Notes: a model not told the origin generated them from the sequence alone. DNA of 64,000 bases from Macrostomum lignano (GCA_002269645.1 NIVC01003379.1:1-64000); one strand, 5' to 3'. Positions 9,794 to 33,700 are shown, counted from the first letter of the stretch. A program made the numbers and translations.

Positions 9794-11060
9794 TCAGGGC
9801 ACGGGTCCGCCTCCGCTCACCGAAGTGGCTTCGGCTTCACCTACCCTGGCTGCAGTTCCACCAGAATTAAGGATAATCGCCAGAGCCTCCGTCAGTGTCC
9901 AGATAGCAAGCTGGCTTACTTCCCAGTCAGTGAGCGGCGGCTCCAAAATAACTTCCATAATTCTGTTGAAGGCTGCGAAAACCACCTCAAGTACAGCCCT
10001 TTGAGGAAAACCCCTCTCACCGTAAGCAGCAGCAGGGGCAGAAACAGTTTGGTTAGGTTCGGTCACGACACGCGCAGAACTGCTTGCAGATGGTGCAGTT
10101 TGATTGGCCGAGGCAGTCGGGGCGACCGTAACCACAGGAGACTGATTGGGCAGCGGTGGCAGCAGCAGCGGCAGCGCGGTTAGAGTAAGCGATTGGTCCG
10201 AGCACCGGTTGGACAGGTTTTGGCCGAGTCGTCTCAGCATAGGAGGCCGGTCCCGGAGCACCAAGTGTCTCGGCTAACTCTTGGCTACCTAATCTAAACT
10301 GGCTGTTGCCCAGCTGCTCAGTTGGCCTAGTCTACTCGAATTGATTTTTAAGAGTTTTAATTACGCTGTGCTCCTTCTCCTGTGGCACACTTATTGCAGG
10401 CAAATTTGGCGCTGCAGCGGCTCTGGGAGTGCCCCAGCCCTTGACAGCGGAGGCATTGAACCTCTTTTACTGGCGGCAGATTGTGACACTCTTCGCACTT
10501 AAACTTCAGCGCGCCTAGCCTAATTCCGTTTTGCAGGCAGGTCTCAACGGTACCCTGGCTTCTGGAGAATAGCCCGATGAACGGCGTTGGCTGCCCAGTC
10601 ACTTTGGAGACGATACGCAGCGCACCATCAAACTGCAAGTTAGCGTATTCCTCCTCAAGATAGGATAGGAGCTCCTCCGCTTCCACGGCAAGAGGAACTC
10701 CTTTAATAATGATTGACCTAACATTAGGCGCTTTCAGTGGCTTGCGAAGCCTGTCATCCGCTTGATGACGCGGCCTGTTGGATGGCAAGCGCCGTGTGAC
10801 TGTTTGCCCTTTCATTTATTTTAATTTTAATGGTGCTGTTAATAATTTATTCATGCCTTCTGGGTTATTGGTAAATACATAGTAGCCTGTGCTGTGGTAG
10901 TGTTCTTTTACTGAGACTACTCTTGTACCCGGAAAGTTCGTTTTTAAAAGTGTTCGAATTTGATAGGGTCTTTAGCCTCGATTGGCATTTCGAAGACCAC
11001 CGGTGCAATTTTAAGATTGGTGCTTGTTGTGTATGAACTTTAAGTTCTATGGTTTATGGG
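9794..11060 (-). pseudogene. LINE ORF1 (gag-like, CCHC zinc knuckle)
   Basis: ORF 10357-10815 has RSIIIKGVP and C-x2-C-x4-H-x4-C. The frameshifted upstream part is shared with the copy at 5990-6300. Confidence 0.8.
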
Positions 11061-11920: not shown

Positions 11921-13897
11921 TCTATACCTATAAAATGAAAACTCTGTGTGTCTGTGTACAATTTTGTTCGCTATGGACTCCCAAACCGCTCAACCAAATT
12001 ACACCAAACTTTACATCCACCCATAACTTACTACGGAGAATGCCTTAGGCTATCTTTAAATTTCCTAGACTCAAGTCTTCCTACCTAAAAGTACAAAAAC
12101 TGCTCAAAATGCGCAATTTTTTCACTAAATCCTCCATAGCGCCGCTCCACTTCTACCGATTCTCTTCAAATTTGACACAGACAATCTTCAACTATTTTGG
12201 CACAATCGTGTAAAATTTCGAGTCTCAAAGTTAATCCTGAACGGCGCTGTGCACTTTAAAAGTTAGGCTGTTTTTTAGCTTAGCAACCACCCCAACCTCC
12301 GCCCGCCTGCCTCTCTTTCCTGATCCCGATCTGGGCCCAGATGTGTAAGGGTTTCAAAATTGACTAACTTTCAGCTGCCATAAGTTTGCTCCACATAAAG
12401 CGATTGACATCAAACTTGGCACAGATCTTCATTGACTCATTCTCTGTCTAAATTTAAAGTTACAACTCAGTAACTCATTCAGAACAGAAACTGTAAGCAT
12501 GTGAAGTTTGTCTGCTTTTTCTGTTGTTTGTGCCACTCACTCACGCATTCCCCCAGAGTCAGAACAAGGGTCAGGCGATAGGGCTGAATGTACATAGCAA
12601 ATACACAGTGTTTTTGGAATAGCTTTGTTTATAGCCTTCTCTGCACCCCGTGGAGAGGCTACGTTTAGCCATCCAAAACAGTTTAGTGAGAAATTCTAAC
12701 CACTGCCCTCTGTATTGTCAAACTCTGCAGCAGTTTAACAGTGGATGGCAAATCGAGGGAATCCAGCATGGTTTGTAATAGCGAAAGATCTATGAAAAGG
12801 CGATGCGATGCAATGCAATACAAGTTATACAACCCTACTAAATAAGGCACACCATGGAAATTGTAGGTTTCTTTTAAAGGTAGTGTGTACATTTTAAATG
12901 GCCTCCTAAGAAATGCGTATTTCATTGGTTGTTAGACTGATGCAGACTGCAGTGGAGCTGAAGATACACAAATTCCTTTCAGGGCTGCAAATTGGCAAGA
13001 AAGATGACGTGATCAAAGCATGAGAACAACGATGAGAGTAGTACGTCCCACAAACTGGCTTTCGAAGCAGGGATCGACAGACTTTTACTTCAAAGCCAGA
13101 TAAAGAATCCAGCTTATGTGCGGGCCAGATGAGAGTGGAAAGGAGAAGGAATAGACTATTAGAAGAGAGGAGAGGCGAGAGGGGGATAAGAGAAAACATG
13201 GAAGATAAGAGGAGAGACAAGTGGGGAGGAGAGAGCAGAAAAGAAAGGAGGAAGAAGCGAGAGGAGGGGAGAAGGGAGGGAGAGGAAAGAGTCAAGGTGA
13301 GAAGAGGGGAGAGATGAGACAGAGGATCGATGAGAGGAGAGTAAAGAAGAGTGAGAAGAGAGTAGAGATGAGAGAGCAGAAAGAAGATGACAGAGTCAAG
13401 AGGAGAGGAGAGATTAGAAAGGAGAGAGTAGAAAGGATAGAGAAGAGAGGAGATAGGAGGGGGAGAGAGGAGTGAGAGGAAAAGAGAAAGAGATAAGAGA
13501 GAGGTGTAAGAAGAGGGGAGAAAGAAGAGATCAGATTGTAGAGAAGAGACAGATGAAAGGAGAGATGAGAGAGTAAAGATGAGAGATAAAAAAGGTGAAA
13601 AAAGAGTGCAGAGAGACGAGAGAAGATAATAGAGGAGAGAGAGTATAGAAGAGGGAAGAGAAAAGAAGAGAGGAGTCAGAAAAGGTGAAAGAGAAGAGTA
13701 CAGAGGAGATAAGTGAGAGAACGTATAAGAGAGTAAAGATGACAGATGAGAGAGCAGAGATGAGGGTGAACAGACGAGAGATGGGAGAGTAGAGAGAAGA
13801 GATTATAGAAACCAGAGGAGAGACAGGGAGAGAGAAGAGAAAATAGGAGAATGAAGAGGGGAGAGAGTAGAGAGGAGAAGAGAGATGGGAGAGGAGA

Positions 13898-13957
<60 letters not shown>

Positions 13958-15177
13958 GAGCAGAGAGAAGCGAGAAGGCGAGAAGAGATAAGAGAAAAAA
14001 GATAAAAGAAGAGAAAGGAGAGATATAAGAGCAGACGAGAGAGAAGAGAGGTGACGGAAGAGCCGAGCGACGAGGAGACAGAGAGGAGATAAAACAAGAA
14101 AAGAGATGAGAGGAAAGAGGTGAGGGAAGAGACGAGAGAAGAGGGGAGAGAGAAGAGATAAAACAAGAAAAGAGATGAGAGGAAAGAGAGAGACGAAAGA
14201 GGTGAGGGAAGAGACGAGAGAAGAGAGAAGAGAGGAGAGAGAGAGGAAAGAGTAGAGAGGAGAGATGATAGAGTAGAGGAGAGAGTTAAGAGAAGAGAGA
14301 AAAGAATAGAGAGGACAAGGAAGAGACGAGAGAAGAGGGGGAGAGAGGAGAGAGGAGAGGAGAGAGAAAAGAAGAGGGAAGAAATGAGATAAGAGATATG
14401 AAAGAGAAAAAAGATGAGGTAATATACGAAAGAAGATGGGAGAGAGGAGAGAGGAGAGGAGAGAGAAAACGAAAGAGGAGAGAGGAGAGCAGAGAGAAAA
14501 CGAAAAGTAGAAAGGAGAGAGGAGAGGAGAGAGAAAAGAATAGGGAAGAGATGAGATAAGAGATATGAAAGAGAAGAGAGATGAGGGAAGATACGAAAGA
14601 AGATAGGAGAGGAGAGGAGAGAGAAAACGAAAGAGTAGAGAGGAGAGAGGAGAGGAGAGAGAAAACGAAAAGTAGAGATGAGAGAGAAGAGAAGAAAGAA
14701 AACGAAAAGTAGAGAGGAGAGAGAGAGAAAAGAGTAGAAGAGAAGAGACAAGAGATAAGATAAGAGAGATGAAAGAGGAGAGAGATGAGGGAAGATACGA
14801 GAGAAGAGAGGAGAGAAGAGAGAGGAGAGACGAGGGACGAGAGAGAAGAAAGGAAACAGAAGAGACGATAGAAATATAGAAATAGAAAGGATCCAAGAGA
14901 CGTAGGGAGAGTCAGGGGGAGGCCAGAGTTTGCCAACACATGTTTTAGAGTCAGACAGACATTGCCTGACATTCTTCGGAGTACCCCAGCCAACAATATC
15001 AATGTTTGCCTCAAACCCTAATTTTACACGAGTGTGCTCCATTTTATGTCTACCCCTATCCTACGAACTATTAACAAGTTTTTGTTTGTGTATGGCCTTA
15101 GATTTCAGAATACATGCAAAAGTGGTTCCCAGGATTGGAATTCCCCGGGTTCAAAATCCGCGGGTTTCAACAGCTTG
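11921..15177 (+). mobile_element. Non-autonomous Helitron
   Basis: 5' end A|TCTATACCTATAAAATGAAAACTCTGTGTGTCTGTGT is typical of non-autonomous Helitron heads. Degenerate 3' end: GC hairpin (CCCGGG..CCGCGGG) followed by CAACAGCTTG|T, with CTTG in place of CTAG. Confidence 0.6.
13125..14900 (+). repeat. 1.8-kb polypurine (GA-rich) low-complexity tract including a pure (GA)n run
   Basis: Almost exclusively G/A on the + strand; it generates the spurious S/L/F-rich minus ORFs. Confidence 0.95.
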
Positions 15178-18100: not shown

Positions 18101-19721
18101 AGCGCTTCGTGCCCAGAGGGCCAAGGACCCACATGGACCCCACCTGTAGCCAAGGTGCAATAGTTGGTCACTCGGTCATGGTATGACCGAGTGGCTGCCA
18201 CCACTCTATGTGACCTGGCGCACCTGGATCTTTCTACCAGACCTCTCGAGGCTAGAGCCCCGCCTGGGATGGTTACCAGGAGATTTAGGCTAACAGGGGA
18301 GACACACGCAGCCGAGTACAGGGACTCTGCTTGGGGCATGATCGGAAACTCTGGGCTCAATCTGGAGGATTTCTCAGCAGGGGATCCTTTGTGGCTGTGA
18401 GCGAGGCTGACTTGCGACTTTGATTACTAAGAGTAGTATGAGGCGAACATGTACTGTCTATAGTTTAGATTGCTTAGGGCGAAGGGACGCGTTAGCATGG
18501 GGTTTCAACCTTCCTACTGCCATTCTGTGCCAAGACTCGCTAATACCCTCTACTGCACGCACTCACGGACCCGCGGCACGCACTCGCACAGGCGGGCTTT
18601 GCACGGAGAGAGGCCATTAGCTTACCCAAACTTCCCTATGCTTTGCCACCCCGGAAGAAAGGCTTAACAAGCCATGAGTGAAATGATGGTGAAAGAGTGA
18701 ATAATGATGAGGTTAGTTAATAGTTAATAATTCGGCCCTTAGGCAAATAATCAGGCAATTAGGCGGCTTCACTATTGAGTAAAAATACAGCAAAAGGTAC
18801 GGTATCACAACTGGCTCAGCTCTCTAATCAGACAATGGACAAATAAGCAAATGCAATTAGAGCACAAATCAGTAACAGGAACTTACCGGCAGCTGCACAG
18901 AGAGAGAGAGAGAGAGAGAGAGGCGGAGTGACCGAGGGCGGCTGTAGGCTGCAGTCAGGCGGACAGTGAAGCGGCGATGCGCTGAAGCGACGAGGCGCTG
19001 GTGTAGATCAGGCGAAGCTGATGATGCTGGGTGGTGTCAGACCGCTGGCCGATAGGCGAGCTCACTTGGGGAGCTGAAGATAACTTGGCGGTAACAGACC
19101 GCGGACCGGCAGGGATTCGTCTTATAGACGAATGGGTCAGAACTCAGTCTGACGGCAAGTCTAAAGAAAGACTAGGAGCCCGAAGGTGGGCCAAAGTTGA
19201 GTATTCTCACTAGCAATCTACGCCCCCCGTTGGGGAGCCAAAGAAATGCAATACAAGTTTTTTAATAAGCTAAATGTATCCTTGAAATCTTAAAAAATCT
19301 CCTGTCAAACCTTGTAAGCCTTGACATGTCAGTAATTCCCCCCACAAGCTTTAACATATCAACTTCCCCCCCCCCTGACATATCAGCAATGCCCCCAATA
19401 AGCCTTTAAAATCTAAAAATATCTGTCAACCTTCTAACCCTAATCCTAACCTAACCCTAACCCTAACTCGGACACTGGGAGACTGATACTGTATTTCGGG
19501 AGACTAATACACTTCTGGGAACCCGATACAGTTTGGTGCATCATACTCCCAGGTTAGGGTTTGAAGTGTATGTATCACCCTCAAGGTGTATTAGTCTCCC
19601 TCTTTGCTTTTTCACCTTAGGGTTATCTATGGAGTACACAGAACATGTAACTACACAACACTATGGAGTGCTAGTGCTACTGTTACTATTAGGTTTACAT
19701 AGCGTCACATAAGGTGACATT

Positions 19722-20143
19722 GGGTTAAATGGGGTTAGGGTTAAATATGGTTAGGGTTAAATAGGGTTAGGGTTAAATGGGGTTAGGGTTAAATGGGGTT
19801 AGGGTTAAATAGGGTTAGGGTTAAATAGGGTTAGGGTTAAATAGGGTTAGGGTTAAAAAGGGTGAGGGTTTAAAAGGGTTAGGGTTAAAAAGGGTGAGGG
19901 TTTAAAAGGGTTAGGGTTAAAAAGGGTGAGGGTTTAAAAGGGTTAGGGTTAAATGGGGTTAGGGTTTAAAAGGGTTAGGGTTAAATGGGGTTAGGGTTAA
20001 ATAGGGTTAGGGTTAAATAGGGTTAGGGTTAAATAGGGTTAGGGTTAAATAGGGTTAGGGTTAAATAGGGTTAGGGTTAAAAAGGGTGAGGGTTAAATAG
20101 AGTTAGAGTTAAATAGGGTTAGGGTTAAATAGGGTTAGGGTTA
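19722..20143 (+). repeat. Telomere-derived minisatellite, ~16-bp unit TTAGGGTTAAATAGGG
   Basis: About 25 tandem units with variants (TTAAATGGGG, TTAAAAAGGGTGAGGG). Confidence 0.9.
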
Positions 20144-21579
20144 TCGATTTCGACGGGGATCGCTTCTACATTTATCCAAGAGTACAGGGGGTCAAGTCCG
20201 GCCGAGATCCATCAAAATTAAGGGGCACTCGGAAATCACTTTCGTGACCGATGTCTGGGCAGGTGAGAATTTAAGAAGTGATAGAGCATCTATCCATGCG
20301 TCGGATGCTGTTTGTCTCATCAATAGATGTGCTACCGTTTCCGGCTGGCAGCCGTTCCCGCAAAGTGTAATTGCCCCCTCACCGTTTCTGCGCATGGAGG
20401 TACGCTGGACACTTTGAGTGCGATTAGCCAGCCTTCCCCTTGGTATTTCCGGACGTTCTTGGTGTCGTTGGAAAGCTCTAGTGATGCTCTATCGAATTGC
20501 ATTCAACGGAATTGGGTGCCACCTGCTCGTGGTAGATTCCGCCGCGACAGACGGACTTCCGGAAAGTGGCCAGTCAATCCCTTAGACCCCGAAGTACAAA
20601 ATTTTGGCAGAGACACTTTGAAAAAAACAAAGACACCTAGTCCGATGTATTTCGACACGTAGAGTCGGAATTTGACGGTCGCGAGACTGTCCGACGCAAG
20701 CTAAACTATCTTCAGCCGTTTTACACCTAAGAAACCCGCTACTTGCTACCATAAGTAGTATAGAAGTTTTTAGCTGTTCTATTCTGACTGGCCGACCAGC
20801 CCACTATGTAGTCCAGGCTGTGCTCGCTCTAACGACGCCACACACGTCGCTAGATGTGCTTCCGCTGTCGACTGGCAGCCGTTGCCACAAAGTGTAATAA
20901 TTCCCTCAATATTTTTAGGGCTAGAGTTGCAAGTTTCCAAGGCTCCAGCTTCGGCGCTATTGGCGCCAAAGTGGCGCCGCTACCGTCAGACGATTGGGTA
21001 TTTATTAAAGTGTGTATAGACGCTCGCGTCGCGCCGGTAGATGCCGCCGTTCTTTTTTGGCAACGCGCCAAGTAAAGCGTAATAATTCCCTCAGTCGTTT
21101 TATAGCGTTTGCCTAGGCTAAGTATTGCACAACAGACTGGTCCCATAGAGTGACCTATTGACCCCGGATTTCGACGGGAATCGCTTCTACGCTTCTACAA
21201 AATACTTAGTATCCAACTTCTAGGTTGCTCAGGCTGCTTATTAGTAGTAGTAGCGTAACTGCGACGTCATTAAAATAATGCAAGGCTGCCAACAGAATAA
21301 CCTTTTCCCTCCTATATTACCTGCTGTTGGTGTACAGCGGACATTTTGATGCTACAGGCATATGTTTATTCATTCACTTTCGGACAATGGGCGATGGTAA
21401 ATCATAGTGGTCAGCTAGTTATATTTAAACAGTTAGCGCAAAATTAGAGCTAAGGAGGGGCGAAGGCCGGATGTACGGATATTGACGATGGATAAACATG
21501 CAATTACACTATCTGAACTTATTTTTGAGAAAGTGTTTATATGCTTATGTAAATGCATACAATGCATAAAATGCAGCTT

Positions 21580-22423
21580 TTAAAATCGGCTTGTTTCAAC
21601 GTATATCCAGGCCTTGTTGGCCGCGAGTGCCAGCGAAATGATGTCGGCGCTTCTTAGCCGTTGAATCTGATTGCGCCCTGAGTAGAAAAAATATTAAGAA
21701 AAGAAACCGTCGTTTACATTCTGCGTATACCATGCTACTACCAAAGCAAGTAAAGTATAATTAACAAGTGTAAGGCAAAGAATCTAAACTCACCAACTGC
21801 TTGGCCATTAACGAATGTGCCATTGCTGCTCAGGTCTTTTATCACCGTCACGGGAGTGCCGCCAGCGTTATGCTACAAAACAACGGATAACTTGGTTCGA
21901 TTGACTCATCTTGACTCATCCGATTCTCAGGAGTCCCGACTGTGAAATAAGACTTACTCTTTTTATCTCCAAATGCCTTCGTGAGTACAGAAGGATATTG
22001 GGATCATTTCCTTCCATCAACACTTCCGTACATGATATGTCCCGACCAATGGTGACGACATTTTCGTCATTCTTCAGAGCTGCGGGGTTACGAATGAATG
22101 ACACTTTTATGTCTACTTCTCGATGATCTTCCTCGACGTCCTCGATGTCTGGCACATCACCATCCATACTCACTAGGCCCGAGTATTACCAAATGTCTTT
22201 TATACCAAGGTACCAAACGCACAAATGAGCAAAATGACTCACCGACGTTTTTAAAAAAATAAGGCAAAGCGAATAACCACCCATATGTCGGAGAGGTTGA
22301 AGCCACAGCTTCACTTGTGGTGCACTGTGGTGCGCTTGTGGTGCCAACTCCTGGTGCGTCACCTGTGCTGTCTGCAGCTGCCACCATGACAGCTGCGTCG
22401 GCCAGCAAATCTAGCGCGGAATT
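21580..22423 (-). CDS. Spliced gene for a stand-alone Chk2-type FHA domain protein (~147 aa from ATG 22387), no kinase domain
   Basis: Exons 22423/22387-22243, 22079-21958, 21872-21794 and 21677-21580 have GT-AG sites and compatible phases (1,0,1). Product: ...PTYGWLFALPYFFKNV|ALKNDENVVTIGRDISCTEVLMEGNDPNILLYSRRHLEIKR|HNAGGTPVTVIKDLSSNGTFVNGQAV|GRNQIQRLRSADIISLALAANKAWIYVETSRF*. FHA motifs GR, SxxH and NGTFVN are present, and the GRDxSC and IALSLxxNK features are Chk2-like. Confidence 0.85.
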
Positions 22424-22964
22424 CTAAAGCATCCGATCTTGTTACTATGTTACTTGTTACATGTTACTGGATTCGATAAACATGTTCCTGGATTCCATAA
22501 AAATGTTACTGGATTTTTGGAAAATGCCCTTTTAGAACAGACTGATTTTGGCATATCTTTGAAATGTGTCACTTATAAAATTAAAAAGCAAATTTAAAGC
22601 AATCATGTATAATAAAAATATTTAAATCTTTCCTGGCTACTCTGGTTTCCTGGTATTTTGTCTCTTCTAGACCTGAGCAGATCAAAGCACCTTCTAAAGT
22701 AAATTTTAAAAATAAAGTGGATGTTAAAAGTAGCTTCTTAACTAGCAATCTACGCCCCCCGTTGGGGAGCCAAAGAAATGCAATACACGTTTTTTTAATA
22801 AGCTACAGGTATCCTTGAAATCTTAAAAAATCTCCTGTCAAAACTTGTCAGCCTTGAAATGTCAGTAATTCCCCCCCCACAAGCTTTAACATATCAACTT
22901 CCCCCCTTGACATCTCAGCAATGCCCCCAATAAGCCTTGGAAATCTAAAAATATCTGTCAACCT

Positions 22965-23090
22965 TCTAACCCTAACTCTAGCCTAACCCTAACCCTAACC
23001 CTAACCCTAACCCTAGCCTAACCCTAACCCTAACCCTAACCCTAGCCCTAACCCTAACCTAACCCTAACCCTAACCTAAACCTAACCCTA
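22965..23090 (-). repeat. Interstitial telomeric-type tract (CCCTAA)n with variant units
   Basis: About 20 units including CCCTAG, CCTAA and CCTAAA variants. Confidence 0.95.
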
Positions 23091-23639
23091 ATCTGCATCC
23101 GAGGGGCTCCTGGCGGACTAACCCCCTCACGAGGGGGTTCTCGCGGCGAGGGGCTCTTCGCCCCTTACCTTGCGAAACGCCCCTCCAGGGGGCGCGAGAA
23201 GCCCCTCGCCATGTGCGAGAAGCCCCTCACCATAAGAATACATGTATTTTTTTCTTTTTTTTTCCGCAATACAATCTATAAATCCTTTCGTTTCTCTATC
23301 AACCTAAGCCACTATTTGAGGTCCCTTGACCTCCGTAGGCGGTCAGGGGGGAATTAACCCAAAAAAGCTTAATAGAGTGACATTTACTTTCGACGCTTTT
23401 CCAAGGTATGAGATAGAGGTCACCTTGTCATTAGGATTTTCTATACCATCCTAATCCGAGATCTCAGGGTGAGACTTTTCCGATTAGGTGAGATTTACCT
23501 TTAGATACGTTTTTCGGGTATGAGATAGGGGTCACATCTAACATATATTATACGGACTATCTAATCTTACAATCCTACAGTGAGATCTCAGGGTGCCTCT
23601 TTTCCAATAGGGTGAGATTCAGATTTAGATCTGAATTAT

Positions 23640-25395
23640 CCGCTTATCACTCTACTGAGCGACGATATTTAGTAGTCAAGATGGGCTTAAAATTATGAGG
23701 GGCGAAATGCCCCTCTTGAGGGGCAAATAGCCCCTCCTATCTCTACTAAAACACTTTTATAAGTTCCTTTCCTATATTCTCTGAGTAACAATTGACTTTG
23801 AACACATTTACATAACTGAAAGTCCGACTACCAAAACCTAGGATGGCCAGAAGCTAAAGTGAAGTAACGTCATATCAGTATATCGACCTTCTAAGAAAGT
23901 GTACTGATTTTCTAGAGTAGATGTCTGGAGCATTATTCTCTCTTCAGATTTCAGAAATAATATAAAAAGACAGGGAAATTTATATCATATCTTTGCTTTA
24001 TCGCAAGAGTGCGCTCAGTCTTTTTATTACGCTTATCACTCTACTGAGCGACGATATTTAGTAGTCAAGATGGGCTTATAATTATGAGGGGCGAAATGCC
24101 CCTCGTAAGGGGCGAATAGCCCCTCATATTTCTACTAAAATACTTTTATAAGTTCCTTGATATATTCTCAGAGTAACAATTGACTTTAAACATTCTTATA
24201 AGAGGCAATAAAGACAGTATAGTCATGACATGCCAGATATTGCATGTCCCCTGAAAAACTTACTACTCTGACATAGGCATACGTCGGTTCTCCTGACGAG
24301 GGTGAGAGTTACCTTCAGGACTCTCAAACGTTCATTGCGCTACTCATAATAAAGTGTATAACATGGACTTGTATGGTTAAGAACAAGAGCATGCAGTTGA
24401 ATGCCCCAATAGTACCTAACCTCTGAGTTGAAAATCTTACTCCTCACTATATTGGCAAACATCAAAGAGCAAATAAAAGCCAAGTCGAGATTCACTTGGC
24501 CGCATAGAAAAATGTTTGACAACTACTTAGGATATTTTTTCGCTTTAGGAGGTCTATACACGATTTCAGAATTTTTACACAACTGAAAGTCCGACTACCA
24601 AAACCTAGGATGGCCAGAAGCTAAAGTGAAGTAACGTCATATCAGTATGACCGAGTCCGCTCAGTCATTTTGATACGCTTATCACTCTACTGAGCGACGA
24701 TATTTAGTAGTCAAGATGGGCTTATAATTATGAGGGGCGAAATGCCCCTCGTAAGGGGCGAATAGCCCCTCATATTTCTACTAAAATACCTTTATAAGTT
24801 CCTTGATATATTCTCAGAGTAACAATTGACTTTAAACATTCTTATACGAGGCATTAAAGACAGTATGGTCAAGACACGGCAGATATTGCATGTCCCCTGA
24901 AAAACTTACTACTCTGACATAGGCATACGTCGGTTCTCCTGACGAGGGTGAGAGTTACCTTCAGGACTCTCAAACGTTCATTGCGCTACTCATAATAAAT
25001 TGTATAACATGGACTTGTATGGTTAAGAACAAGAGCATGCAGTTGAATGCCCCAATAGTACCTAACCTTTGAGCTGAAAAACTTACTACTTAACTGTATG
25101 GGCAAGCATAATAGAGCGCACAACAGCCAAGTCGAGATTCACTTGGCCGCATAGAAAAATGTTTGACAACTACTTAAGATATTTTTCGCTTTAGGAGGTC
25201 TATACACGATTTCAGAATGTTTACACAACTGAAAGTCCGACTACCAAAACCTAGGATGGCCAGAAGCTAAAGTGAAGAAACTTCATATCAGTATACCGAC
25301 CTTCTAAGAAAGTGTACTGATTTTCTGGAGTATATGTCTGGAGCATTATTCTCCCTTCAGGTTCTAGAAATAATATAAAAAGACCGGGAACTTTA
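23640..25395 (+). repeat. Three imperfect direct repeats of a ~650-720 bp unit with twin GAGGGGC/GCCCCTC hairpins
   Basis: CGCTTATCACTCTACTGAGCGACG starts at ~23641, ~24030 and ~24677. Copy 1 is internally deleted and copy 2 lacks the tail shared by copies 1 and 3. Confidence 0.9.
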
Positions 25396-25842
25396 CATTA
25401 ATTAGTTTCAAATTAAGTAATCGAATTTATTTCTTGGAAATGCTGCGACATTCTTATCTCATTATCGACCATGTTATTTTTTTCGAAGCATGGCACACTA
25501 GGGAAAGAAAATCTTCAATTATCAAACCAAAAAGCAAAATAATAAGCAAAATAATGCGGAAAGCAAGCCAATAAGCAAAATGATAAGCAAAGCAACACAA
25601 AATTGTAAGCAAAGTAAAATACGAAGTACTAAGCAAACCAAAAATTAAAAAAGAAAATATAAGGAGGTCAATGAAAAAAATTATGAGCAATAAATCAGCC
25701 ATGAAGTAATTAAGTATTAAGCAACTAAGCAATTAAGCTATTAAGTAAAGAATTGTAAGTGATCTAAATCGATTTTTTAAGTATGTTTAAGCTTTATCTT
25801 GTATTGATTTCTGACGGGAATATTTTTAGAACGAGTTTTATT

Positions 25843-27533
25843 TTAATCGTTCAGCCATTACAACTCTCCAGAGTTTCCGCGTCCCTAGGGCCGTAGTCGA
25901 ATAAAAGTTCACGTCCCTTCGGAACATATTTTGTAGTCTGGAAATATAGGGCCGGTCGAATCACGCCTCCCGGACATTGACACCGGTGGTGACTACTCGG
26001 CAGTTTTTTTTTGTCCGAGAATGATTTAAGAACCTTCCGACGCGATCGGTGTCCGTGGCGTCGATAGCATATTCCCGGCCATTGAAATCAAAGTTAAATA
26101 AAAAAAACGTGTCTTTGTCGGCCTCGGCGAGCTCGACGTAGCGAGTGTCGGATTCCGTCTTGCTAAGAAGCTTACCTGCATACTCGCATACGTATGCTCC
26201 TCTGGCGAGGGCACACGCAGCAAAAGCTCCGCGGCCTTTGCTCCGGGTAGCACTAACAGTTACTGCTGAGTCATCGTTGTTAAGGAGCCGCCGGAGGACT
26301 TCTGCTTGTCCTGCTGCCTTTCGGGCACCCTTTAAGCTAGCTCCCCGCGTAGGGCCGCGGATAGTGACGTCGGCAGGGCCTTCGTCGTTGCCACTGCCAC
26401 TGCCGACGTCGCCACTGCCGAATGAGGCATCGAGGTCTACCTATATTTTTTCAATTAAAGTATGTATGAGGCTTGTATGAGCATGTAGAGACTTAAAGTA
26501 TAACCTCAACTACGAGGTTAAGAGCTTATGGACTTACGATTTAGGACTCAAAATACAAAAGGTATAAAAGAAAATAATACGGGTATAAGTAAAAGTACTT
26601 TAAAAGTAGTAGATAAAAGACGAAAAATAACAATTAAACCAGACAATAAATATTTATTACATACATCGAATAATGGCCCTCCAGGCAAGGATCCATTAAT
26701 AACGGACCGACGCGCGTCCGGTGTCTATATTGAGTAGTATTTAGATCGAATGAACATTAATGTACATCTTGCTAATTTACATCTATACGATATCGTAGGC
26801 CTGTGTAGAATCTGGGGCAAGGTATCATGCTATGCCATGCTATACTATACTACGAGCTCGTAAAATTTGCGCCAGGGTTTCTATGCTATCTTTCTGCATA
26901 GCGTGCTGAATACCGCTTATATAGATCTGCTACAAGTAAGTAAACGTGAATACTAGCAGATACAAAATACTTACAGCGGCAGCAGCGGAGCTGGTGGTGG
27001 TGGAGGTAGCAGCGGAGGTGGCGGTGGTGGAAGTAGCAGCGGAGGTGGCGGTAGCAGCGGATGTGGCAGTGTAGGCGGCCGTCATAGTGGCACCGGCAGC
27101 ACCGGCACCGGCACCTTCAGCTGGCTGGACAGGTTATATTTGAGGTTATATAAATATATTTAGCTAAAGTTATCATGTAATTTTGATTCATTTGCCCTTA
27201 AAAGCATGGAAAACTTACTTGGAAAAAGCGTGTTGGATAATAAAAAGATTATTGACACTGAACACTAAACGACTTGATTGTGCTTATAAACTTTTTTATA
27301 AGTTTGTAAATTGACTACTTTTTTTATTTAAAGCTTTCGCAGAAAGACTATGAATGCTTAGTTAAAATATGGAATTAAGAATTGGTATCTAAAATTTTAC
27401 GGCTTACACTAGGCATTTTTGGGTTTGGAGAACCTTGAACCGATTCTAGGGTCCTGCGTTGGCTTATAATGAGGACGTGCTGAATTCGCAGCATTTCTTT
27501 TAGCCAGGCGTTTTCTGATTCCAAAGCTCGCAT
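25843..27533 (-). CDS. Spliced SET8/PR-Set7 (KMT5A)-like lysine methyltransferase gene (~291 aa) with two 1-nt frameshifts at short homopolymers
   Basis: Exons 27533-27408 (MRALESENAWLKEML...), 27124-26975 (Ala/Thr-rich) and 26440-25843, all phase 0 with GTAAG donors. The last exon reads SKGRGAFAACALARGAYVCEYAGKLL...YAIDATDTDRVGRFLNHSRTKKNCRVV...[fs ~25972]PGGVIRPALYFQTTKYVPKGRELLFDYGPRD...ESC[fs ~25858]KWLND*. Motifs KGRG, EYxG, DAT, RxxNHS, ELxxDYG and the terminal WL match SET8. It is missing from the ORF track because the exon has no start codon. Confidence 0.85.
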
Positions 27534-27808
27534 CTGCTTTTCTCGATTCTAGTTAAATTATATATTTAAAATAGGGGAAATCGAGAAAATTACGCATCGT
27601 TAAATATTTTTAAACAGCTTATTTTTTCTCAAAATCAAAAACAATACTTTTAAACGGTTTATTTATTTCTCAAACTCACAAATCAGATAAAATCAGAAAG
27701 AATATAATAAAAAGAAAGAAAAGTTTTTCAAATAAGATAATGCCTGAACCTGAATTATTTGCACAAATAAATTGTCTTAAAGAAATAATATTATAATTAT
27801 TATGTAAT

Positions 27809-29510
27809 TCATCGACGCTTCCGCCTGGCTGCTCGCTTCTTGGCGGCGTACATATTCTTAAATTTAGGCTCATACTTTGAGCTATAATAAAATGCCACAC
27901 ATTGTGCAATAGTCTTGCTATTGATGGCGGCGGCGATCTTCGAAAACTCTTTGCCGAATTTTTTAAACGCCCGTAAAAACTGGCCCTTCTCGTCTTCTGT
28001 CCAATTTGCGAATTCGCTTGAAGCGTACTGAATCCTGCGCGCCAGATCACTTTGCGCAGAATTCAGTAAATTAAAGTGCGTTCTACACGCAAGCGTCTTC
28101 AAATCCTAAATGAAACAAAATTGAACATTAAATGCACGAACCAATACGGAAAAGAAACCAATATAAGAAACCAATTTTAAGATCAAGATCAAGTTACAAG
28201 TTCTTGCCCTTGAAAATCTTAATGATCGCGTTCTGAATACTTTCAAACTTCCGGTTACAAGTATTGATCAGAACGTGATTACTAAAAGAATTGTGCCCTT
28301 CCTGAAAAACTTACTACGCGAAATAATGTTTGACTTTCTGACACAAAAATACATTGAATTTACTGTCTGCTAAATTCTTTAGGAATGACGTGAATATTGT
28401 GACACACTCACCGCTTCATGTGAATGTCCACGGCCGGTTGGACAATTCCTTGGCACCGTTGTGGCACTGGCCGAGGCGGAATGTGATGGCAGCTGAGGTG
28501 AGGCCGAGTCACCGGAGACCTGAGGCACCAGAGGCACCACAGGCTCGCAGGGCACATCATCATTGGTTTGCCACTGGGAAAGCATTTCAGCAAGATTGAG
28601 GAAAAATTTAGATTTTGGATGACACTTTTATAGTCTAGAAAACCCTAACCACTTTTATAGTCTAGAAAAAGTTACCTAATGCTTACAGAAAACCAATTAC
28701 AATATTCATTTATTTTGATTCTAAAAAGTGTGACTACAGGCTTTCAGAAAATTATATAAAGTATAAATAGAAATCAAGTTCTTGCCCTTGAAAATCTTAA
28801 TGATCGCGTTCTGAATACTTTTTATTAAAAACTTCCGGTTACAAGTATTGATCTGAACGTGATTACTAAAAGAATTGTGCCCTTCCTGAAAAACTTACTA
28901 CGCGAAATAATGTTTGACTTTCTGACACAAAAATACATTGAATTTACTGTCTGCTAAATTCTTTAGGAATGACGTGAATATTGTGACACACTCACCGCTT
29001 CATGAGAATTTCCGGTCGGTTGGACCGTTGAAGAACGGCCGGTTGGACCGCTGTGGCACTTCGGCACCGTTGTGGCACTGCTGGCACTGGCCGAGGCCGA
29101 ATGCGGTGGCCGCTGAGGTGAGGCCGAGCCACGCTGAGGCACCAGAGGCACCAGAGGCTCGCAAGGTGAGGCCGAAAGGTGAGGCTCGCAAGGCACATCA
29201 TCATCATCAGTCGTTTGCCACTGGGAAAGCAATTCAACCAGATTGAGGAAAAAATTAGATTTTGGATGACACTTTTATAGTCTAGAAAACCCTAACCACT
29301 TTTATAGTCTAGAAAAAGTTACTTAATGCTTACAGAAAACCAATTACAATATTCATTTATTTTGATTCTAAAAAGTGTTACTACAGGCTTTCAGAAAATT
29401 ATATAAAGTATAAAAATCATTAGAAAAGTGGTTTGCAGAACCGAAATACTTACCTTTGTCCGTTTGCTGGGTTGGTCACTTGACGAGTTGACGAGTGGAC
29501 GTTTCGCAGC
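27809..29510 (-). CDS. Spliced gene for an NCoR/SMRT-type SANT-domain protein (~246 aa, no in-frame ATG found)
   Basis: Exons 29510-29454 (57 nt), 29220-28996 (225), 28573-28412 (162) and 28105-27809, all phase 0. The SANT reads WTEDEKGQFLRAFKKFGKEFSKIAAAINSKTIAQCVAFYYSSKY and is followed by a basic tail KKRAARRKRR*. Confidence 0.75.
28190..29410. repeat. Tandem duplication (~585/640 bp) of one exon plus flanking intron
   Basis: CAAGTTCTTGCCCTTGAAAATC...TATAAAGTATAAA occurs at ~28197-28765 and ~28775-29413. Confidence 0.92.
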
Positions 29511-29648
29511 CTGGATACGGGGGAAGTTGTTTGAATTTTTGTTACAAAGACTACTCCTTAATCTTAGTTGCCTCCACGCTTCTTGTACGTAGAAGCGTGG
29601 CCCCTCAGCCCCTCACGACTCTAACCCGCCCTGAGCCCCTCAAAGGAC

Positions 29649-29777
29649 AACCCTAGCCCTAACCCTAACCTAACCCTAACCCTAACCTAAACCTAACCCT
29701 AGCCCTAACCCTAACCTAACCCTAACCCTAGCCTAACCCTAACCCTAACCCTAACCCTAACCCTAACCTAACCCTAA
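29649..29777 (-). repeat. Interstitial telomeric-type tract (CCCTAA)n with variant units
   Basis: About 21 units. The first 53 nt are identical to 23038-23090. Confidence 0.95.
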
Positions 29778-30609
29778 AGCATTGAAATTTCAGTAATTCT
29801 CTCTAAGAGTCATTATAGCACTACTACAGCATTATAGCGATTCCCTGCAAGCCTCGACATCGTAGGAATTCCCAAATCAATCTCTTAACTTCGACATGAA
29901 GCTTCTTTTATTTTTTACATTACGGTTTTTTTATCAGCGATCCCTCCCCTGAGGAGGCATCAAATAATGTAACAAAAAGTTTTTAATAAACTACATGTAG
30001 CTTCTGGCTTTAGCCTTGAAATCTCATTTATACCCCAGTGAGCCTTGACATCTCAGCTATTCCCCCCGTAAGCCTTGACATGTCAGCGATGGCCCCCATA
30101 AACCTTGAAATCTAAAAAATCCCCTGTTACTTTAACCCAACCTAAAGCCTTGAAATCTCAGCAATTCTTCTCCCCTAAGCCTTGACATTTTAGTGATTCC
30201 TTTTTTAAGAATCACAGCACTATAACGATTTCCACCAAGCTTTGACATCGTAGCAATTCCCAAATTAATCTTTTAACTTCGACATGACTTTTCTTTTATG
30301 TATACATAGTGCTACTTTTATTTTTTACATGACTCTTCTTCTATCAGCGCCCCCCCCCGTGGCGAGCCAACAAAGAATGTAATAAAAAATTGAGTAAAGT
30401 ACATGAACTCTGAAGTAGCTTCTGACTTTTGCTTTAACATCTCAGAAACCCCCCCCCCGTAATCTTAGTTATTCTCTGAGAGCCTTGACGTCTCAGTTTT
30501 TCTCCCCAGCACAGCATTATAGCTGCATTTAATTTTTACATGACACCTTTCATGTCTGACATGACGCTTCTTTTATTCTACCATGATGCTTCTTAATTTT
30601 TTAAATGAC

Positions 30610-31030
30610 ACTTTCATTAGTCTTTAAATGAGGCTTCTATGATTTTTCATGACGCTTCTATGATTTTTACATGATGTTTCTATGATTTTTTATATGACGC
30701 TTCTATGATTGTTTATATGACGCTTCTATGCTTTTTACATGACGCTTCTATGATTTTTTTACATGACGCTTCCATGATTGTTTACATGACGCTTCTATGA
30801 TTTTTACATGACGCTTCTATGATTTTTTACATGACGCTTCTATGATCGTTTAGATGACGCTTCTATGATTTTTACATGACGCTTCTATGATTTTTTTACA
30901 TGACGCTTCCATGATTGTTTACATGACGCTTCTATAATTTTTACATGACGCTTCTAAGATTTTTTACATGACGCTTTTATTATTTTTTACATAACGCTTT
31001 TATGATTTTTTACATGACGCTTCCATGATT
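30610..31030 (+). repeat. Tandem repeat, ~22-24 bp unit ATGACGCTTCTATGATTTTTTAC
   Basis: About 18 directly visible units; no unique spacers. Confidence 0.92.
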
Positions 31031-31659
31031 TTTTAGTTTTCTTGGCGTTAAAAAACTTTAATTAAAAAAACTCTCTAAAAATTCGAACCATCGTCCCTGC
31101 ATTTAGCAGTCAGTCTGTTTACCTCTAGGCTAGCTCTCATCGTTTTGATAACATGAATTTTAGCACTTCTATTTGGAGTTTCAAAACTCCAAGCATAGAG
31201 TAAATCACACGAGGCAGTTATGACATAAACAATTTCTCAGTCAGTCAGTATCAGTTAACAATATGGTTACGCAATCTAAATCAAGTCTGTGCTACGCTTC
31301 CACACAGCATTTTCAATACTGTGACGCAATTCAAGTCGGAGTTACAATTCAGTTATGATGCAATCTATTTCAGAATCATAATTCAACCAGTCAGTTTTTT
31401 CTCTAGCATTCTTACAATGCATTTCAAGTCGAAAAGTTTGCTTGAACTTTGCAAAAAAGCATGTTTTTCGAATATTTTATGCCTTTAGCATCGAGAATTT
31501 CTTAGCCACGATGCATGTACCGTCACGGGAAAATTTCTGATCGAACAGTGCAAGTCTCATGAAAATCGGTCCAGCCATTTTTTCTCTAATCGATTGCGTA
31601 CAAACAAACAAACAAGCAAGATTTTCATTTTTAGTATATTGGATGGACTAGCCAATCCC

Positions 31660-33700
31660 AACCCCCGTTGGGGCTTTCCGTCCAAACTCCAACCACAGTT
31701 TTCCCCATCCACAAAATCCCCGATGCAAAGAATCTCACATGCAAAGAATCCCCCATCCAAAGAACCCCTATCGATAGAATCACGATCCGAATAATTCCCC
31801 ATTCAATGAATCCCCTACTCAAGAAATTCCCGATCTACAGAAGCCCCCTATCTAACGAATCCCCATCCAAAGAATCCCTCATCCACAGAATCCCCATCCA
31901 AAGAATCCCTCATCCACAGAATCCAAATATAAAGAATCCTCCATCCATCCCTATCCAAAGAATTTCCTCATTCATTCCTATCCAAAGAATTTCCTCATTC
32001 ATTCCTACCTAAAGAATCCCCCATCCATCCATATCCAAAGAATCCCCCCAATGAATCACATCACATCATAATTCACATCATAATCCCCATCTAAATAAAC
32101 CATAGATCTCCCATCTAAATAATCCATAGATCTCCCATCTAAATAATCCGCCATCAAAGAAATAACTGGCCAAAGAATTCCCTCATCTAAAGAACCCCGT
32201 CCGAATAATCCCCATCCAACGAATCCAAAGAATCTCCCATCCAAATAATCCCCCTATTAATAGAATTCTTGGCCAAAGAATCCCCTCATCTAAAGAACCC
32301 CCGTCCAAATAACCCCCATCTAACGAATCCTTCATTTAAAGAATCAACTATTCGAAAAACCCTCCATCGAAACAATGCCCCATCAAAGGAATTCCCTAAT
32401 GAATCATCTATCCAAAGATATCCATCCATTAGAAGCATCCCTCATCCAAAGAATCATCAATCCATAGAATTCCCCCCAAAACTTAACATCTCAGCAATTC
32501 CCCCGAGCCTCGACACCTCATAAAATTCCCCCAAGCCTTGACATCTTACCAATTTCTTCCCGTCCAAAGCCTTGACATCTTACCAATTTCTCCCCGTCCA
32601 ACGCCTTGACATCTTACCAATTTCTCCCCGTCCAACGCCTTGACATCTTACCAATTTTTCCCCGTCCAACGCCTTGACATCTTACCAATTTATCCCCGTC
32701 CAAAGCCTTGACATCTCAGCAGTTCCCCGTTAAGCCTTGAAATCTCAGCAATTCTCCTCCACAAGTCTTGCATCTCAGCAAGTCCCTCTTAAGCCTTGCA
32801 ATCCCCCAAAGTCCCTCTTAAGCCTTCACATCTCATTAATTCCAATAGGTAAGATTTTATACATGTACCTGGTATTTCAATAATTCCCCCTATAAATCTT
32901 GACATCTTAGAATTCTCTTCCGAGCAAGCATCCCCTGATAGAAAGTACCCCCACCAAGATTAGTGAAACAATTTCCTCAGCTATCCAATTCCAACCCCCG
33001 TTGGGGCTATTCGTCCAAACTCAAACCACAGTTTTTCCACGCAATAAAATTTCACCCAACTGAATCTCAAATTTAAAGAATCCCCCATCCAAAGAATCCA
33101 CCACCCATAGAATCCACGATACAAAGAATCTCACATGCAGAGAATCCCCATCCAAAGAAACCCCCATCGATAGAATCCCCGATCCGAAGAATCCCCATCC
33201 GTCCCTATCCAAAGAATCCCCCCATCCATCCCAATCTAAAGAATCCCCCATCCATCCCTATCCAAAGAATCCCCCCATCCACAGAATCCCGATCAAAATA
33301 ATGCAAATATTCTCTCATCCAAATAAACCTCCATCAAAAGAATCATTGAATCTGAAGAATCTGAATCTGAGTCCCCTCATCTAAAGAACCCCGTCCAAAT
33401 AATCCAAAGAATCATACTCCAAATAAACTCCATCTAAAGAATCAAAGAGTCTCCCGTCTAAATAATCCCCCATCAATAAAATCCTAGGCCAAAAATCCTT
33501 CATCTAAAGAATCCCCCATTCAAAGAACCCTCCATCGAAAGAATCCCCCATCGATGGAATTTCCCAATGAATCACCTATCTAAAGATATCCATTAGAAGC
33601 AGCCCTCATGGAAGGAATCCCCAATCCACAGAATTCCCCCCCCCAAGACTTGACATCTCAACAATTCCCCCCAAGCCTTGATACCTCAGTTCATTCTCTC
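31660..33700 (+). repeat. Helitron-internal satellite blocks (AAGAATCCCCATCC; GCCTTGACATCTCAGCAATTCCCC; 34-bp tandem at ~32530-32720)
   Basis: Two related blocks (31660-32980, 32982-33700), each starting with the CCCCCGTTGGGG hairpin. Confidence 0.8.

What the first reader, a model, noticed from the sequence alone, without database searches (positions are those of the whole stretch)
19210..31643. Helitron array carrying a three-gene chromatin/DNA-damage kit (Chk2-FHA, SET8-like, NCoR-SANT)
Seen: a Helitron 5' end (A|TC, 31643) and two intact hairpin-CTAG|T 3' ends (22742, 19210) on the minus strand bracket three small intron-containing genes on the same strand. There is no RepHel. Known: Helitrons capture host DNA with introns and extend by 3'-end bypass; H4K20 methylation, HDAC3 co-repressors and Chk2 all act in chromatin and the DNA-damage response. 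Inference: three functionally related regulatory modules with clean splice phases are unlikely to be random junk. They may form a mobile cassette that modulates host silencing or checkpoint responses, which I do not recognise as a described system.
Basis: partly seen in the sequence, partly recalled or inferred. Interest (0 to 1): 0.88.

Follow-up and report, generated by a model that had tools for sequence, protein, structure and literature searches.

The report
Helitron ends around decayed gene fragments
A repeat-rich stretch of the flatworm Macrostomum lignano genome holds a same-strand series of rolling-circle transposon (Helitron) tail ends interleaved with partial copies of three regulatory genes. 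Two of the three copies are broken, so this looks like ordinary transposon-associated gene-fragment shuffling and not a working mobile chromatin kit.

Summary
The window is Macrostomum lignano DNA (Mlig_3_7, scaffold NIVC01000293.1). The Helitron 3' ends at 19210 and 22742 are real: identical hairpin-CTAG|T 26-mers inside a 260-bp module that is 93% identical between the two copies. There are at least four more 3'-type modules on the same strand (32981, 31648, ~30340, ~29930). The proposed 5' end at 31643 lies 4 nt after one of them and cannot be verified. No RepHel is present.

The three domain calls hold:
- **FHA:** 58% identical to M. lignano's own Chk2.
- **SET:** closest to KMT5A/SET8.
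- **SANT:** closest to the first SANT domain of NCoR-type proteins.

They are not three clean genes. Only the FHA unit is an intact ORF (147-178 aa, no kinase exons). It also carries a second 1-nt deletion and a stop in the C-terminal PWL motif. The SANT unit has no start codon.

No near-identical protein exists in public collections, and no second copy could be examined. The best reading is Helitron-associated gene fragments (known as protogenes when they form new coding units). Capture is plausible but unproven, and a functional cassette is unsupported. Interest is low to moderate.

The parts
32981..33700 (-). Helitron-like tandem unit A: about two 34-mer copies, a 16-mer minisatellite, then hairpin + ATAG at 32981
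   Evidence: about 70% identical to unit B
31648..32980 (-). Helitron-like tandem unit B: 34-mer minisatellite (TGTCAAGGCTT...), 16-mer minisatellite (GGATTCTTTGGATGGG), then hairpin + CTAG|T at 31648
31036..31647 (-). Putative Helitron 5' region. About 600 bp is unique sequence.
   Evidence: unverified because no second copy exists in the window
30559..31035 (-). 23-bp minisatellite (GTCATGTAAAAAATCATAGAAGC), 21 copies
29778..30558 (-). Two and a half short tandem units, each with 23-mer-like repeats, 34-mer-like repeats and a hairpin. Their 3' ends are degenerate: CGCTGATAG at ~30340 and CGCTGATAA at ~29930. The third unit is truncated by the telomere-like tract.
   Evidence: (D19, D20)
29649..29777 (-). 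(TTAGGG)n telomere-like tract
27809..29220 (-). SANT unit. Exon A is 29220-28996. Exon B is 28573-28412 and is a tandem duplicate of A. The SANT exon is 28105-27809 and ends in a stop. All exons are phase 0 with GT-AG introns. There is no in-frame ATG. A possible further upstream exon ending at 29454 is open as far as the TTAGGG tract.
25843..27533 (-). SET8-like unit. Exons are 27533-27408 (ATG), 27124-26975 and 26440-~25843. The frame changes between 26000 and 25967, giving an in-frame TGA at 25963-25961. There is a 1-nt deletion near 25871 and a TAA (25860-25858) in place of the Pro of the terminal PWLxx* motif. It is a pseudogene unless these are assembly errors.
23640..25400 (-). Tandem repeat of about 647 bp, about 2.7 copies, 92-95% identical, carrying GAGGGGC...GCCCCTC hairpins. 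No domain hit.
22966..23091 (-). (TTAGGG)n telomere-like tract that leads into the 3' module
22742..22999 (-). Helitron 3' module ending in hairpin GCTCCCC-AAC-GGGGGGC, 11 nt, then CTAG|T
21580..22387 (-). FHA-only unit, a partial Chk2 paralog. Exons are 22387-22243, 22079 (or 22172)-21958, 21872-21794 and 21677-21580. The ORF is intact at 147 (or 178) aa. There is no kinase domain.
19722..20143 (-). 16-bp satellite (CCCTAACCCTATTTAA)n, 26 copies. It is a telomere-repeat derivative in the opposite orientation to the TTAGGG tracts.
19210..19467 (-). Second copy of the Helitron 3' module: a short TTAGGG tract, 34-mer-like repeats, hairpin and CTAG|T

Best explanation
**What it is.** A decaying composite of non-autonomous Helitron sequence in the M. 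lignano genome. Six same-strand 3'-end modules, their internal minisatellites and telomere-like tracts are interleaved with intron-containing partial paralogs of three unlinked host gene types: the Chk2 FHA domain only, a SET8/KMT5A-like gene, and an NCoR-type SANT1 domain.

**Most likely origin (inferred).** DNA-level acquisition or shuffling linked to Helitron 3'-end bypass or composite transposition. Replication would start at an upstream Helitron, fail to stop at one terminator (for example 22742), and stop at the next terminator (19210), carrying along whatever lay between.

**Shown.**
- The termini are real.
- The domain identities are correct.
- The units are partial.
- The SET unit carries disabling lesions.
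- The SANT unit has no start codon.
- No RepHel is present.

**Inferred.**
- That the fragments were moved by the Helitron.
- That the locus is now inert, apart from possible transcription of the intact FHA ORF.
For: - **Termini.** Four hairpin-CT(A)G motif matches (19210, 22742, 31648, 32981), all on the minus strand, against 0.56 expected. Two further degenerate modules on the same strand were read from the sequence and repeat families. A 260-bp module is 92.7% identical at 19210 and 22742 with different flanks. The hairpin is confirmed.
- **Strand.** All three gene units are on the same strand as the termini.
- **FHA unit.** It matches M. lignano Chk2 (P0086, FHA plus kinase, 468 aa) at 58% identity over residues 36-129, and the upstream exon motif YGWLFAL matches YGRLFSL. 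No kinase exons occur anywhere in the 64-kb window. It is therefore a domain-only, intron-containing fragment lying exactly between two 3' termini.
- **SET unit.** Homology to P0083 jumps from frame -1 to frame -3 inside the SET core. A second 1-nt gap and a TAA in the PWL motif follow.
- **SANT unit.** Four phase-0 exons without any ATG; the open frame abuts the TTAGGG tract.
- **No counterpart proteins.** No annotated or predicted protein is near-identical to any unit, although M. lignano proteomes from NCBI and UniRef are in the collections. Mlig_3_7 annotation is transcript-based (PMC5730564).
- **Precedent.** Helitron composite capture and multi-fragment chimeras are documented (PMC4224331).
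Against: - Only one copy is visible. No copy-number, empty-site or expression data could be obtained, so mobility is unproven.
- The 5' end is unverified.
- There is an age mismatch. The 3' modules differ by only 7%, yet the FHA unit is only 58% identical in protein to the one known host Chk2. Either the donor is an unsampled paralog, or the gene units are older residents that Helitrons landed around.
- The intact FHA ORF keeps all canonical pThr-binding residues. The SANT exon duplicates differ by 5 of 5 in-frame indels. Both argue that at least some units were under coding constraint until recently.
- The SET frameshifts could be PacBio assembly errors. Mlig_3_7 has about 64% error-free bases by REAPR (PMC5730564).
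Confidence: 0.52

Rival explanations
1. Bystander model. The FHA, SET8-like and SANT units are resident, lineage-specific (partly decayed) paralogs in a repeat-rich region. Short Helitron-derived modules and telomere-like tracts inserted or expanded around them. Nothing was captured or moved.
For: - The units are far more diverged from known relatives than the Helitron modules are from each other: FHA 58%, SET 45-63%, SANT 45% or less, against 93% for the modules.
- The FHA ORF is intact and keeps its binding residues.
- The SET unit looks like a whole small gene, with ATG, three phase-0 exons and a poly(A) signal, not a fragment.
- All repeats in the region are local, and no second copy of any gene unit occurs in the window.
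Against: - Three domain-only or defective pieces of unlinked gene types, all co-oriented with six Helitron modules within 12 kb, is the classic signature of capture.
- The FHA homology stops exactly at the domain end, with no kinase exons in 21 kb downstream.
- The SANT reading frame runs open into the TTAGGG tract with no start codon.
- None of the units is annotated in either M. lignano proteome.
Confidence: 0.3
2. A mobile Helitron cassette whose three cargo genes (an FHA decoy, an H4K20 methyltransferase and an HDAC3-co-repressor SANT) are expressed and act together on host silencing or checkpoint signalling.
For: - The domain identities are correct and thematically related.
- The FHA ORF is intact and keeps the equivalents of R117, S140, H143 and N166.
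- The units are co-oriented with the Helitron ends.
- The SANT exon duplicates keep the reading frame.
Against: - The SET unit is disabled in its catalytic core and C-terminus.
- The SANT unit has no start codon.
- The cassette spans two separate terminators.
- There is no RepHel, no second copy, and no annotated or predicted protein.
- The thematic link is post hoc.
Confidence: 0.05
3. Assembly artefact. The juxtaposition, the frameshifts or both come from misassembly or unpolished PacBio consensus in a satellite-rich region of a neopolyploid genome.
For: - Mlig_3_7 is a Canu assembly of PacBio, Illumina and 454 data with 63.95% error-free bases by REAPR and 872 fragment-coverage errors (PMC5730564).
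- The region is full of minisatellites and telomere-like tracts.
Against: - Exon-intron structures and reading frames are coherent across kilobases.
- The SET lesions include a multi-substitution TAA codon, not only indels.
- The repeated 3' modules differ by substitutions, as real paralogous copies do.
Confidence: 0.08

Closest known systems
Helitron gene-fragment capture by 3'-end bypass or composite transposition (maize Helitrons; Myotis HelibatN539, PMC4224331)
   Same: A non-autonomous element with a hairpin-CTAG 3' end. It holds intron-containing fragments of unlinked host genes in the element's orientation. One fragment (FHA) lies between an inner and an outer terminator. It has multiple fragments per element, as in maize (1-9).
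   Different: Only a single locus is seen, with no demonstrated amplification, empty site or close parent gene. The fragments are strongly diverged from the only identified host relative. Telomere-like tracts sit at the fragment boundaries.
Helitron/Helentron-derived tandem arrays and satellite-rich non-autonomous elements (DINE-1, PMC4067079; subtelomeric Helitron expansions in Hydractinia, PMC11934779)
   Same: Serial same-strand 3'-end modules, internal minisatellites (16-, 23- and 34-mers) and head-to-tail units (33700-31648; 31035-29778).
   Different: The units here do not begin with a recognisable TC 5' end. (TTAGGG)n is an integral part of the shared 3' module, a feature I could not find described.
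Chk2/Rad53 FHA domain (PDB 1GXC); M. lignano Chk2 (UniRef A0A1I8I977)
   Same: The best structural-sequence match is the Chk2 FHA (E 4.5e-7), and the unit is 58% identical to M. lignano Chk2. The G-R, S-x-x-H and N-G motifs are conserved. From my own knowledge of human CHEK2 exon boundaries (c.319/320 and c.444/445), two intron positions and phases appear shared.
   Different: There is no kinase domain, and the ORF stops 4 codons after the FHA domain.
KMT5A/SET8 H4K20 monomethyltransferase (PDB 3F9W and others)
   Same: Best PDB family (E 2.6e-16). The GxG, NHS and ELLFDYG motifs are recognisable.
   Different: The reading frame is broken within the SET core and at the C-terminal PWL motif. 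The nearest homolog (P0083) carries an N-terminal C2H2-like region that is absent here.
NCoR/SMRT SANT1 (deacetylase-activating domain; PDB 4A69, 1XC5) and CoREST SANT1
   Same: A Myb/SANT fold with an N-terminal extension and the DUF7952 signature, which the top NCoR-like hits share.
   Different: Identity to any known protein is 45% or less. By sequence alone CoREST SANT1 scores as well as NCoR in the PDB. It is a single SANT domain with no start codon.
Transposon-encoded anti-silencing factors (for example VANC of Arabidopsis VANDAL elements; from my own knowledge, not tested here)
   Different: Those are intact, expressed, family-conserved transposon genes. None of this is shown here.

Membership tests
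Canonical Helitron (non-autonomous) | 3' terminus CTRR preceded by a short GC-rich hairpin about 10-12 nt upstream | tested here: met
   GCTCCCC-AAC-GGGGGGC, then 11 nt, then CTAG at 19210 and 22742. A related motif ends at 31648.
Canonical Helitron (non-autonomous) | 5' terminus TC, shared among copies | tested here: inconclusive
   TC is present at 31647 and 31643. No second copy of this sequence occurs in the window. The sequences following the other 3' ends are unrelated.
Canonical Helitron (non-autonomous) | Insertion between host A and T without target-site duplication | tested here: inconclusive
   T follows CTAG at 19210, 22742 and 31648. The 5' side and empty sites are not available.
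Canonical Helitron (non-autonomous) | Multiple genomic copies with the same ends and different flanks | tested here: met
   Met for the 3' module only: two copies, 92.7% identical, with different flanks on both sides. Genome-wide copy number is not testable with these tools.
Canonical Helitron (autonomous partner) | RepHel (Rep endonuclease plus PIF1-like helicase) ORF | tested here: not met
   No such domain was found among stop-free segments of at least 45 aa in the six-frame survey of 18701-33700, and no ORF of 130 aa or more in the window is helicase-like. This is as expected for a non-autonomous element.
Helitron-captured host gene fragment | Host-derived, intron-containing partial gene inside the element, in addition to a separate parent gene | tested here: inconclusive
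   The FHA unit is partial and intron-containing, and a separate full Chk2 exists in M. lignano (P0086). At 58% identity that gene is not a recent donor. Parents of the SET and SANT units were not found.
Helitron-captured host gene fragment | The same fragment amplified in several element copies, or an empty site lacking the element | not testable with these tools
   No searchable M. lignano genome is available. Only 10 kb either side of an annotated protein could be fetched.
Chk2-type FHA domain | FHA fold signature with conserved pThr-binding residues | tested here: met
   Pfam FHA E 2e-12. The alignment to 1GXC keeps the equivalents of R117, S140, H143 and N166.
Chk2 kinase (full protein) | FHA followed by a Ser/Thr kinase domain | tested here: not met
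   No kinase homology occurs anywhere in the window, and the ORF ends after the FHA domain.
KMT5A/SET8 methyltransferase | Uninterrupted SET domain including ELxFDY and the C-terminal PWL segment | tested here: not met
   The frame changes between 26000 and 25967, with a further 1-nt gap and a TAA in the PWL motif, relative to P0083.
NCoR/SMRT-type SANT1 (DAD) | SANT domain with the NCoR-specific N-terminal extension; the protein context has two SANT domains | tested here: inconclusive
   The DUF7952 plus Myb signature is shared with NCoR-like hits, and the top HMMER hits are NCoR-like. CoREST scores equally well in the PDB, and only one SANT domain is present.

The most novel reading that the evidence does not exclude
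The intact FHA-only ORF (147-178 aa, all phosphothreonine-binding residues kept, Chk2-type intron positions) may be an expressed, Helitron-borne decoy. It would bind phospho-T-Q sites of Chk2 or its partners and dampen the DNA-damage checkpoint in a neoblast-rich, radiation-tolerant flatworm. On this reading the SET and SANT units would be former partners now decaying. Separately, the (TTAGGG)n tract built into the shared Helitron 3' module could mean this family seeds or targets telomere-like sequence.
Probability: 0.06. Interest if true: 0.75.

Novelty: new member of a known kind. Interest (0 to 1): 0.27.

Why it matters
If capture is confirmed, this would be a clear example of Helitron-mediated exon and domain shuffling in a flatworm, a group where Helitron biology is barely described. 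It would also provide a candidate protogene (the FHA-only Chk2 paralog) in a regeneration model that has transgenesis and RNAi. As it stands, the main value is as an annotation caution. Domain-bearing ORFs in this region should not be counted as CHEK2, KMT5A or NCOR orthologs, and a frame 'rescued' by a 38-nt intron is a pseudogene artefact.

Tried and rejected
- **Word-indexed protein search.** The FHA unit and the SANT plus SET units gave nothing for FHA and only two SET hits. The index also missed M. lignano Chk2, although the two share a 12-residue exact run. These negatives therefore exclude only near-identical proteins. The full HMMER scan was needed.\n- **Chk2 locus.** I tried to fetch the M. 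lignano Chk2 locus to compare introns and compute dN/dS. It is not on record.\n- **SRR19430222.** The species behind this run, the source of the nearest SET homolog, could not be identified.\n- **TIR hypothesis.** I tested whether the 6.5-kb block between the two TTAGGG tracts (29648-23092) is a TIR-bounded transposon. A 16-nt GAGGGGCTC..GGCGG match scored 22, against shuffles of 14.2 ± 2.3 with a maximum of 25. The motif recurs throughout the region, so the result is inconclusive and I dropped it.\n- **Short-element hypothesis.** I tested whether the 260-bp module is a complete short Helitron. The two copies share no TC 5' end; their homology simply starts inside the TTAGGG tract.\n- **38-nt SET mini-intron.** Rejected. 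The donor is GTCCGG, whereas the nine other predicted donor sites in the three units begin GT[AG]AG. Its translation is conserved coding sequence.\n- **RNA genes.** Rfam and tRNA scans of the window found nothing.\n- **Literature.** Searches for M. lignano Helitrons, or for Helitrons with built-in TTAGGG tracts, found no description.


Full report
**Origin of the window.** A 699-aa ORF at 59544-61643(-) is 100% identical to NCBI protein BOX15_Mlig016445g1 of Macrostomum lignano. That protein maps to GCA_002269645.1 (assembly Mlig_3_7), scaffold NIVC01000293.1, 575 kb. The window is repeat-rich animal DNA. It holds LINE and Gypsy fragments, a DUF4806/transposase-like element and many minisatellites.

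**The Helitron observation.** On the minus strand, the motif CCCCAACGGGG-N11-CTAG ends at 19210 and 22742, with identical 26-mers.
- It also ends at 31648 and, with ATAG, at 32981. That is four matches against 0.56 expected, and no shuffle reached four.
- A 7-bp GC hairpin sits 11 nt before CTAG. T follows CTAG at three of the four sites.
Both upstream and downstream flanks are unrelated.
- The shared module starts inside a (TTAGGG)n tract. The telomere-like tract is therefore part of the repeated unit.

Two further degenerate 3'-type modules (CGCTGATAG at ~30340, CGCTGATAA at ~29930) close short tandem units made of 23-mer and 34-mer minisatellites. The stretch 33700-31648 is two tandem ~1.3-kb units of the related type. 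The region is therefore a same-strand series of at least six 3' modules, not one element with two ends.

The proposed 5' end (A|TC at 31644|31643) is in the sequence. It lies 4 nt after the CTAG at 31648 (CTAG|TCCA|TCCAATATACTA). It could equally be a direct CTAG|TC junction at 31647. It has no second copy in the window to validate it.

No RepHel remnant was found. A Pfam survey of stop-free segments of at least 45 aa, in six frames over 18701-33700, hit only SANT and SET. No long ORF in the window is helicase-like.

**FHA unit (22387-21580, minus strand).** It has four exons with GT-AG introns and an intact ORF of 147 aa (acceptor at 22079) or 178 aa (acceptor at 22172).
- Pfam FHA scores E 2e-12. 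The best solved structure is the human Chk2 FHA domain, E 4.5e-7, and the equivalents of R117, S140, H143 and N166 are kept.
- A full HMMER scan of 1.84 billion cluster representatives put M. lignano's own Chk2 (UniRef A0A1I8I977) as the best FHA relative. It is 468 aa with FHA plus kinase domains and is 58% identical over 95 residues. The upstream exon motif YGWLFAL matches YGRLFSL in that protein.
- Homology stops at the end of the FHA domain, and the ORF ends 4 codons later. No kinase homology exists anywhere in the 64 kb.
- From my own knowledge of human CHEK2 exon boundaries (c.319/320 phase 1; c.444/445 phase 0), two of the unit's introns appear to sit at the same positions and phases. 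That fits a DNA-level copy of a Chk2-type gene. It is recalled, not tested.

**SET unit (27533-~25843, minus strand).** It has three phase-0 exons beginning with ATG (MRALESENAWLKEML...) and a poly(A) signal just after the stop (sequence). The domain is SET (E 2.4e-15) and is closest to KMT5A/SET8 structures (E 2.6e-16).

The nearest homolog is P0083, a 349-aa SET8-like protein from a Logan contig of run SRR19430222 (species unknown). It aligns in two different frames:
- residues 188-298 align to 26332-26000 in frame -1;
- residues 309-340 align to 25967-25872 in frame -3.

That segment's donor is GTCCGG, whereas the nine other predicted donor sites in the three units begin GT[AG]AG.

DNA alignment with the P0083 coding sequence shows two further lesions:
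- a 1-nt gap near 25871;
- a TAA (25860-25858) in place of the Pro of the terminal PWLxx* motif, with the ancestral stop codon still aligned.

Read in its ancestral frame, the unit therefore has two frameshifts and a nonsense codon, which makes it a pseudogene. One caveat applies: Mlig_3_7 is a PacBio-based Canu assembly with about 64% error-free bases by REAPR (PMC5730564). The indels need read-level confirmation. The TAA needs several substitutions and is less likely to be an assembly error.

**SANT unit (29220-27809, minus strand).** The domain exon (28105-27809) gives Myb/SANT at E 2e-10 plus DUF7952.
- In the PDB, CoREST SANT1 (about 2e-10, summed over two domains) and NCoR2 SANT1/DAD (2e-7 to 8e-7) are the best matches.
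- In the full HMMER scan the top hits are long NCoR-like proteins with two or three SANT/Myb domains that carry the same DUF7952 signature, at 30-45% identity. One of them is named nuclear receptor co-repressor 1. 'NCoR-type SANT1' is thus the better label, but CoREST is not excluded.
- Two upstream exons are tandem duplicates: A at 29220-28996 and B at 28573-28412. All exons are phase 0, but there is no ATG in frame anywhere.
- A possible further exon ending at 29454 is open right up to the (TTAGGG)n tract at 29649.
- The only ATG-initiated frame through exons A and B stops at the start of the SANT exon (my reading of the sequence).
- No second SANT domain or other NCoR homology is in the window.
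- The unit is therefore a 5'-truncated fragment.

**Copies and expression.** None of the three units has a near-identical protein in the 5.8-billion-cluster collection or among the representatives. Both M. lignano proteomes are represented there: NCBI BOX15 and UniRef. Because Mlig_3_7 annotation is transcript-based (PMC5730564), this is weak evidence against robust expression. The word-indexed search is insensitive, since it missed Chk2 itself. It therefore only rules out close copies. I could not search the M. lignano genome at the DNA level, so copy number, empty sites and dN/dS remain untested.

**Interpretation.** The pattern is the known signature of Helitron gene-fragment acquisition:
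- partial, intron-containing pieces of three unlinked gene types;
- all co-oriented with the Helitron modules;
- one piece lying exactly between an inner and an outer copy of the same terminator.

Composite events that use one element's 5' end and another's 3' end are documented, as are multi-fragment chimeras (PMC4224331). I rate this the best explanation at about 0.5.

The main rival, at about 0.3, is that these are older resident paralogs around which young Helitron modules accumulated. Two points favour it:
- There is an age mismatch: the modules are 93% identical to each other, while the units are 58% or less identical to known relatives.
- There are signs of past coding constraint. The FHA ORF is intact. 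The SANT exon duplicates differ by five indels that are all multiples of three (6, 33, 9, 6, 21 nt) at 87.8% identity, whereas their flanking introns are 96-99% identical.

Two of the three units cannot make their domain as encoded here. The shared theme is post hoc. Helitron-borne gene chimeras are a described class.

**Verdict.** The structural observation is partly confirmed. The element type and the domain identities are right. 'Three clean genes' and 'an undescribed system' are wrong. It is an ordinary kind of feature in a little-studied lineage. The one thread worth following is the intact FHA-only Chk2 paralog.

Noticed in passing
window 29649-29777, 22966-23091, 19440-19470 (minus-strand TTAGGG); 19722-20143: Three interstitial (TTAGGG)n tracts share one orientation, and two of them lead directly into the shared Helitron 3' module. 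A 26-copy 16-mer satellite (CCCTAACCCTATTTAA) derived from the telomere repeat lies in the opposite orientation. This could mark a former subtelomeric region or a Helitron family with a built-in telomere-like tract.
   Followed up: partly
window 28240-29440: A tandem duplication of about 600 bp contains an exon. The intron parts are 96-99% identical, but the exon is only 88% identical, and all five indels are in frame (6, 33, 9, 6 and 21 nt). The exon has evolved faster than its introns while keeping its frame.
   Followed up: partly
window 23100-25400: A family of GAGGGGC(N5-6)GCCCCTC hairpin palindromes recurs inside a ~647-bp tandem repeat (about 2.7 copies) and next to both TTAGGG tracts. 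It has no domain or Rfam match, and its origin is unknown.
   Followed up: partly
window 57564-61643 (minus): An apparently intact DNA-transposon-like gene set: a 699-aa ORF (100% identical to BOX15_Mlig016445g1, related at 30-42% to insect 'Transposase domain' and DUF4806 proteins) plus downstream ORFs carrying DUF4806 and a 93-bp coding tandem repeat.
   Followed up: partly
window 46676-47337: A 66-bp tandem repeat, 10 copies at 95% identity, is open in several frames on both strands (ORFs of 145-248 aa). It is a periodic-repeat ORF artefact or a repeat protein.
   Followed up: no
window 13403-14865: About 1.5 kb of purine-rich (GAGAGGA)n-like low-complexity DNA with strong GC and AT skew produces spurious 240-500-aa Ser/Leu-rich ORFs on the minus strand.
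   Followed up: no
window 5350-10815 and 49068-51081: Non-LTR retrotransposon fragments (endonuclease, RT and gag-like ORFs, minus strand) and a Gypsy-type RNase H/integrase segment (plus strand), recognised from the ORF translations. They are typical of the repeat load of this genome.
   Followed up: no
L001 (Logan SRR19430222 contig, 1683 bp): The nearest SET homolog (P0083) joins an N-terminal region with two C2H2-like motifs to a SET8-like domain. This architecture is unlike canonical KMT5A. Its species is unknown.
   Followed up: partly
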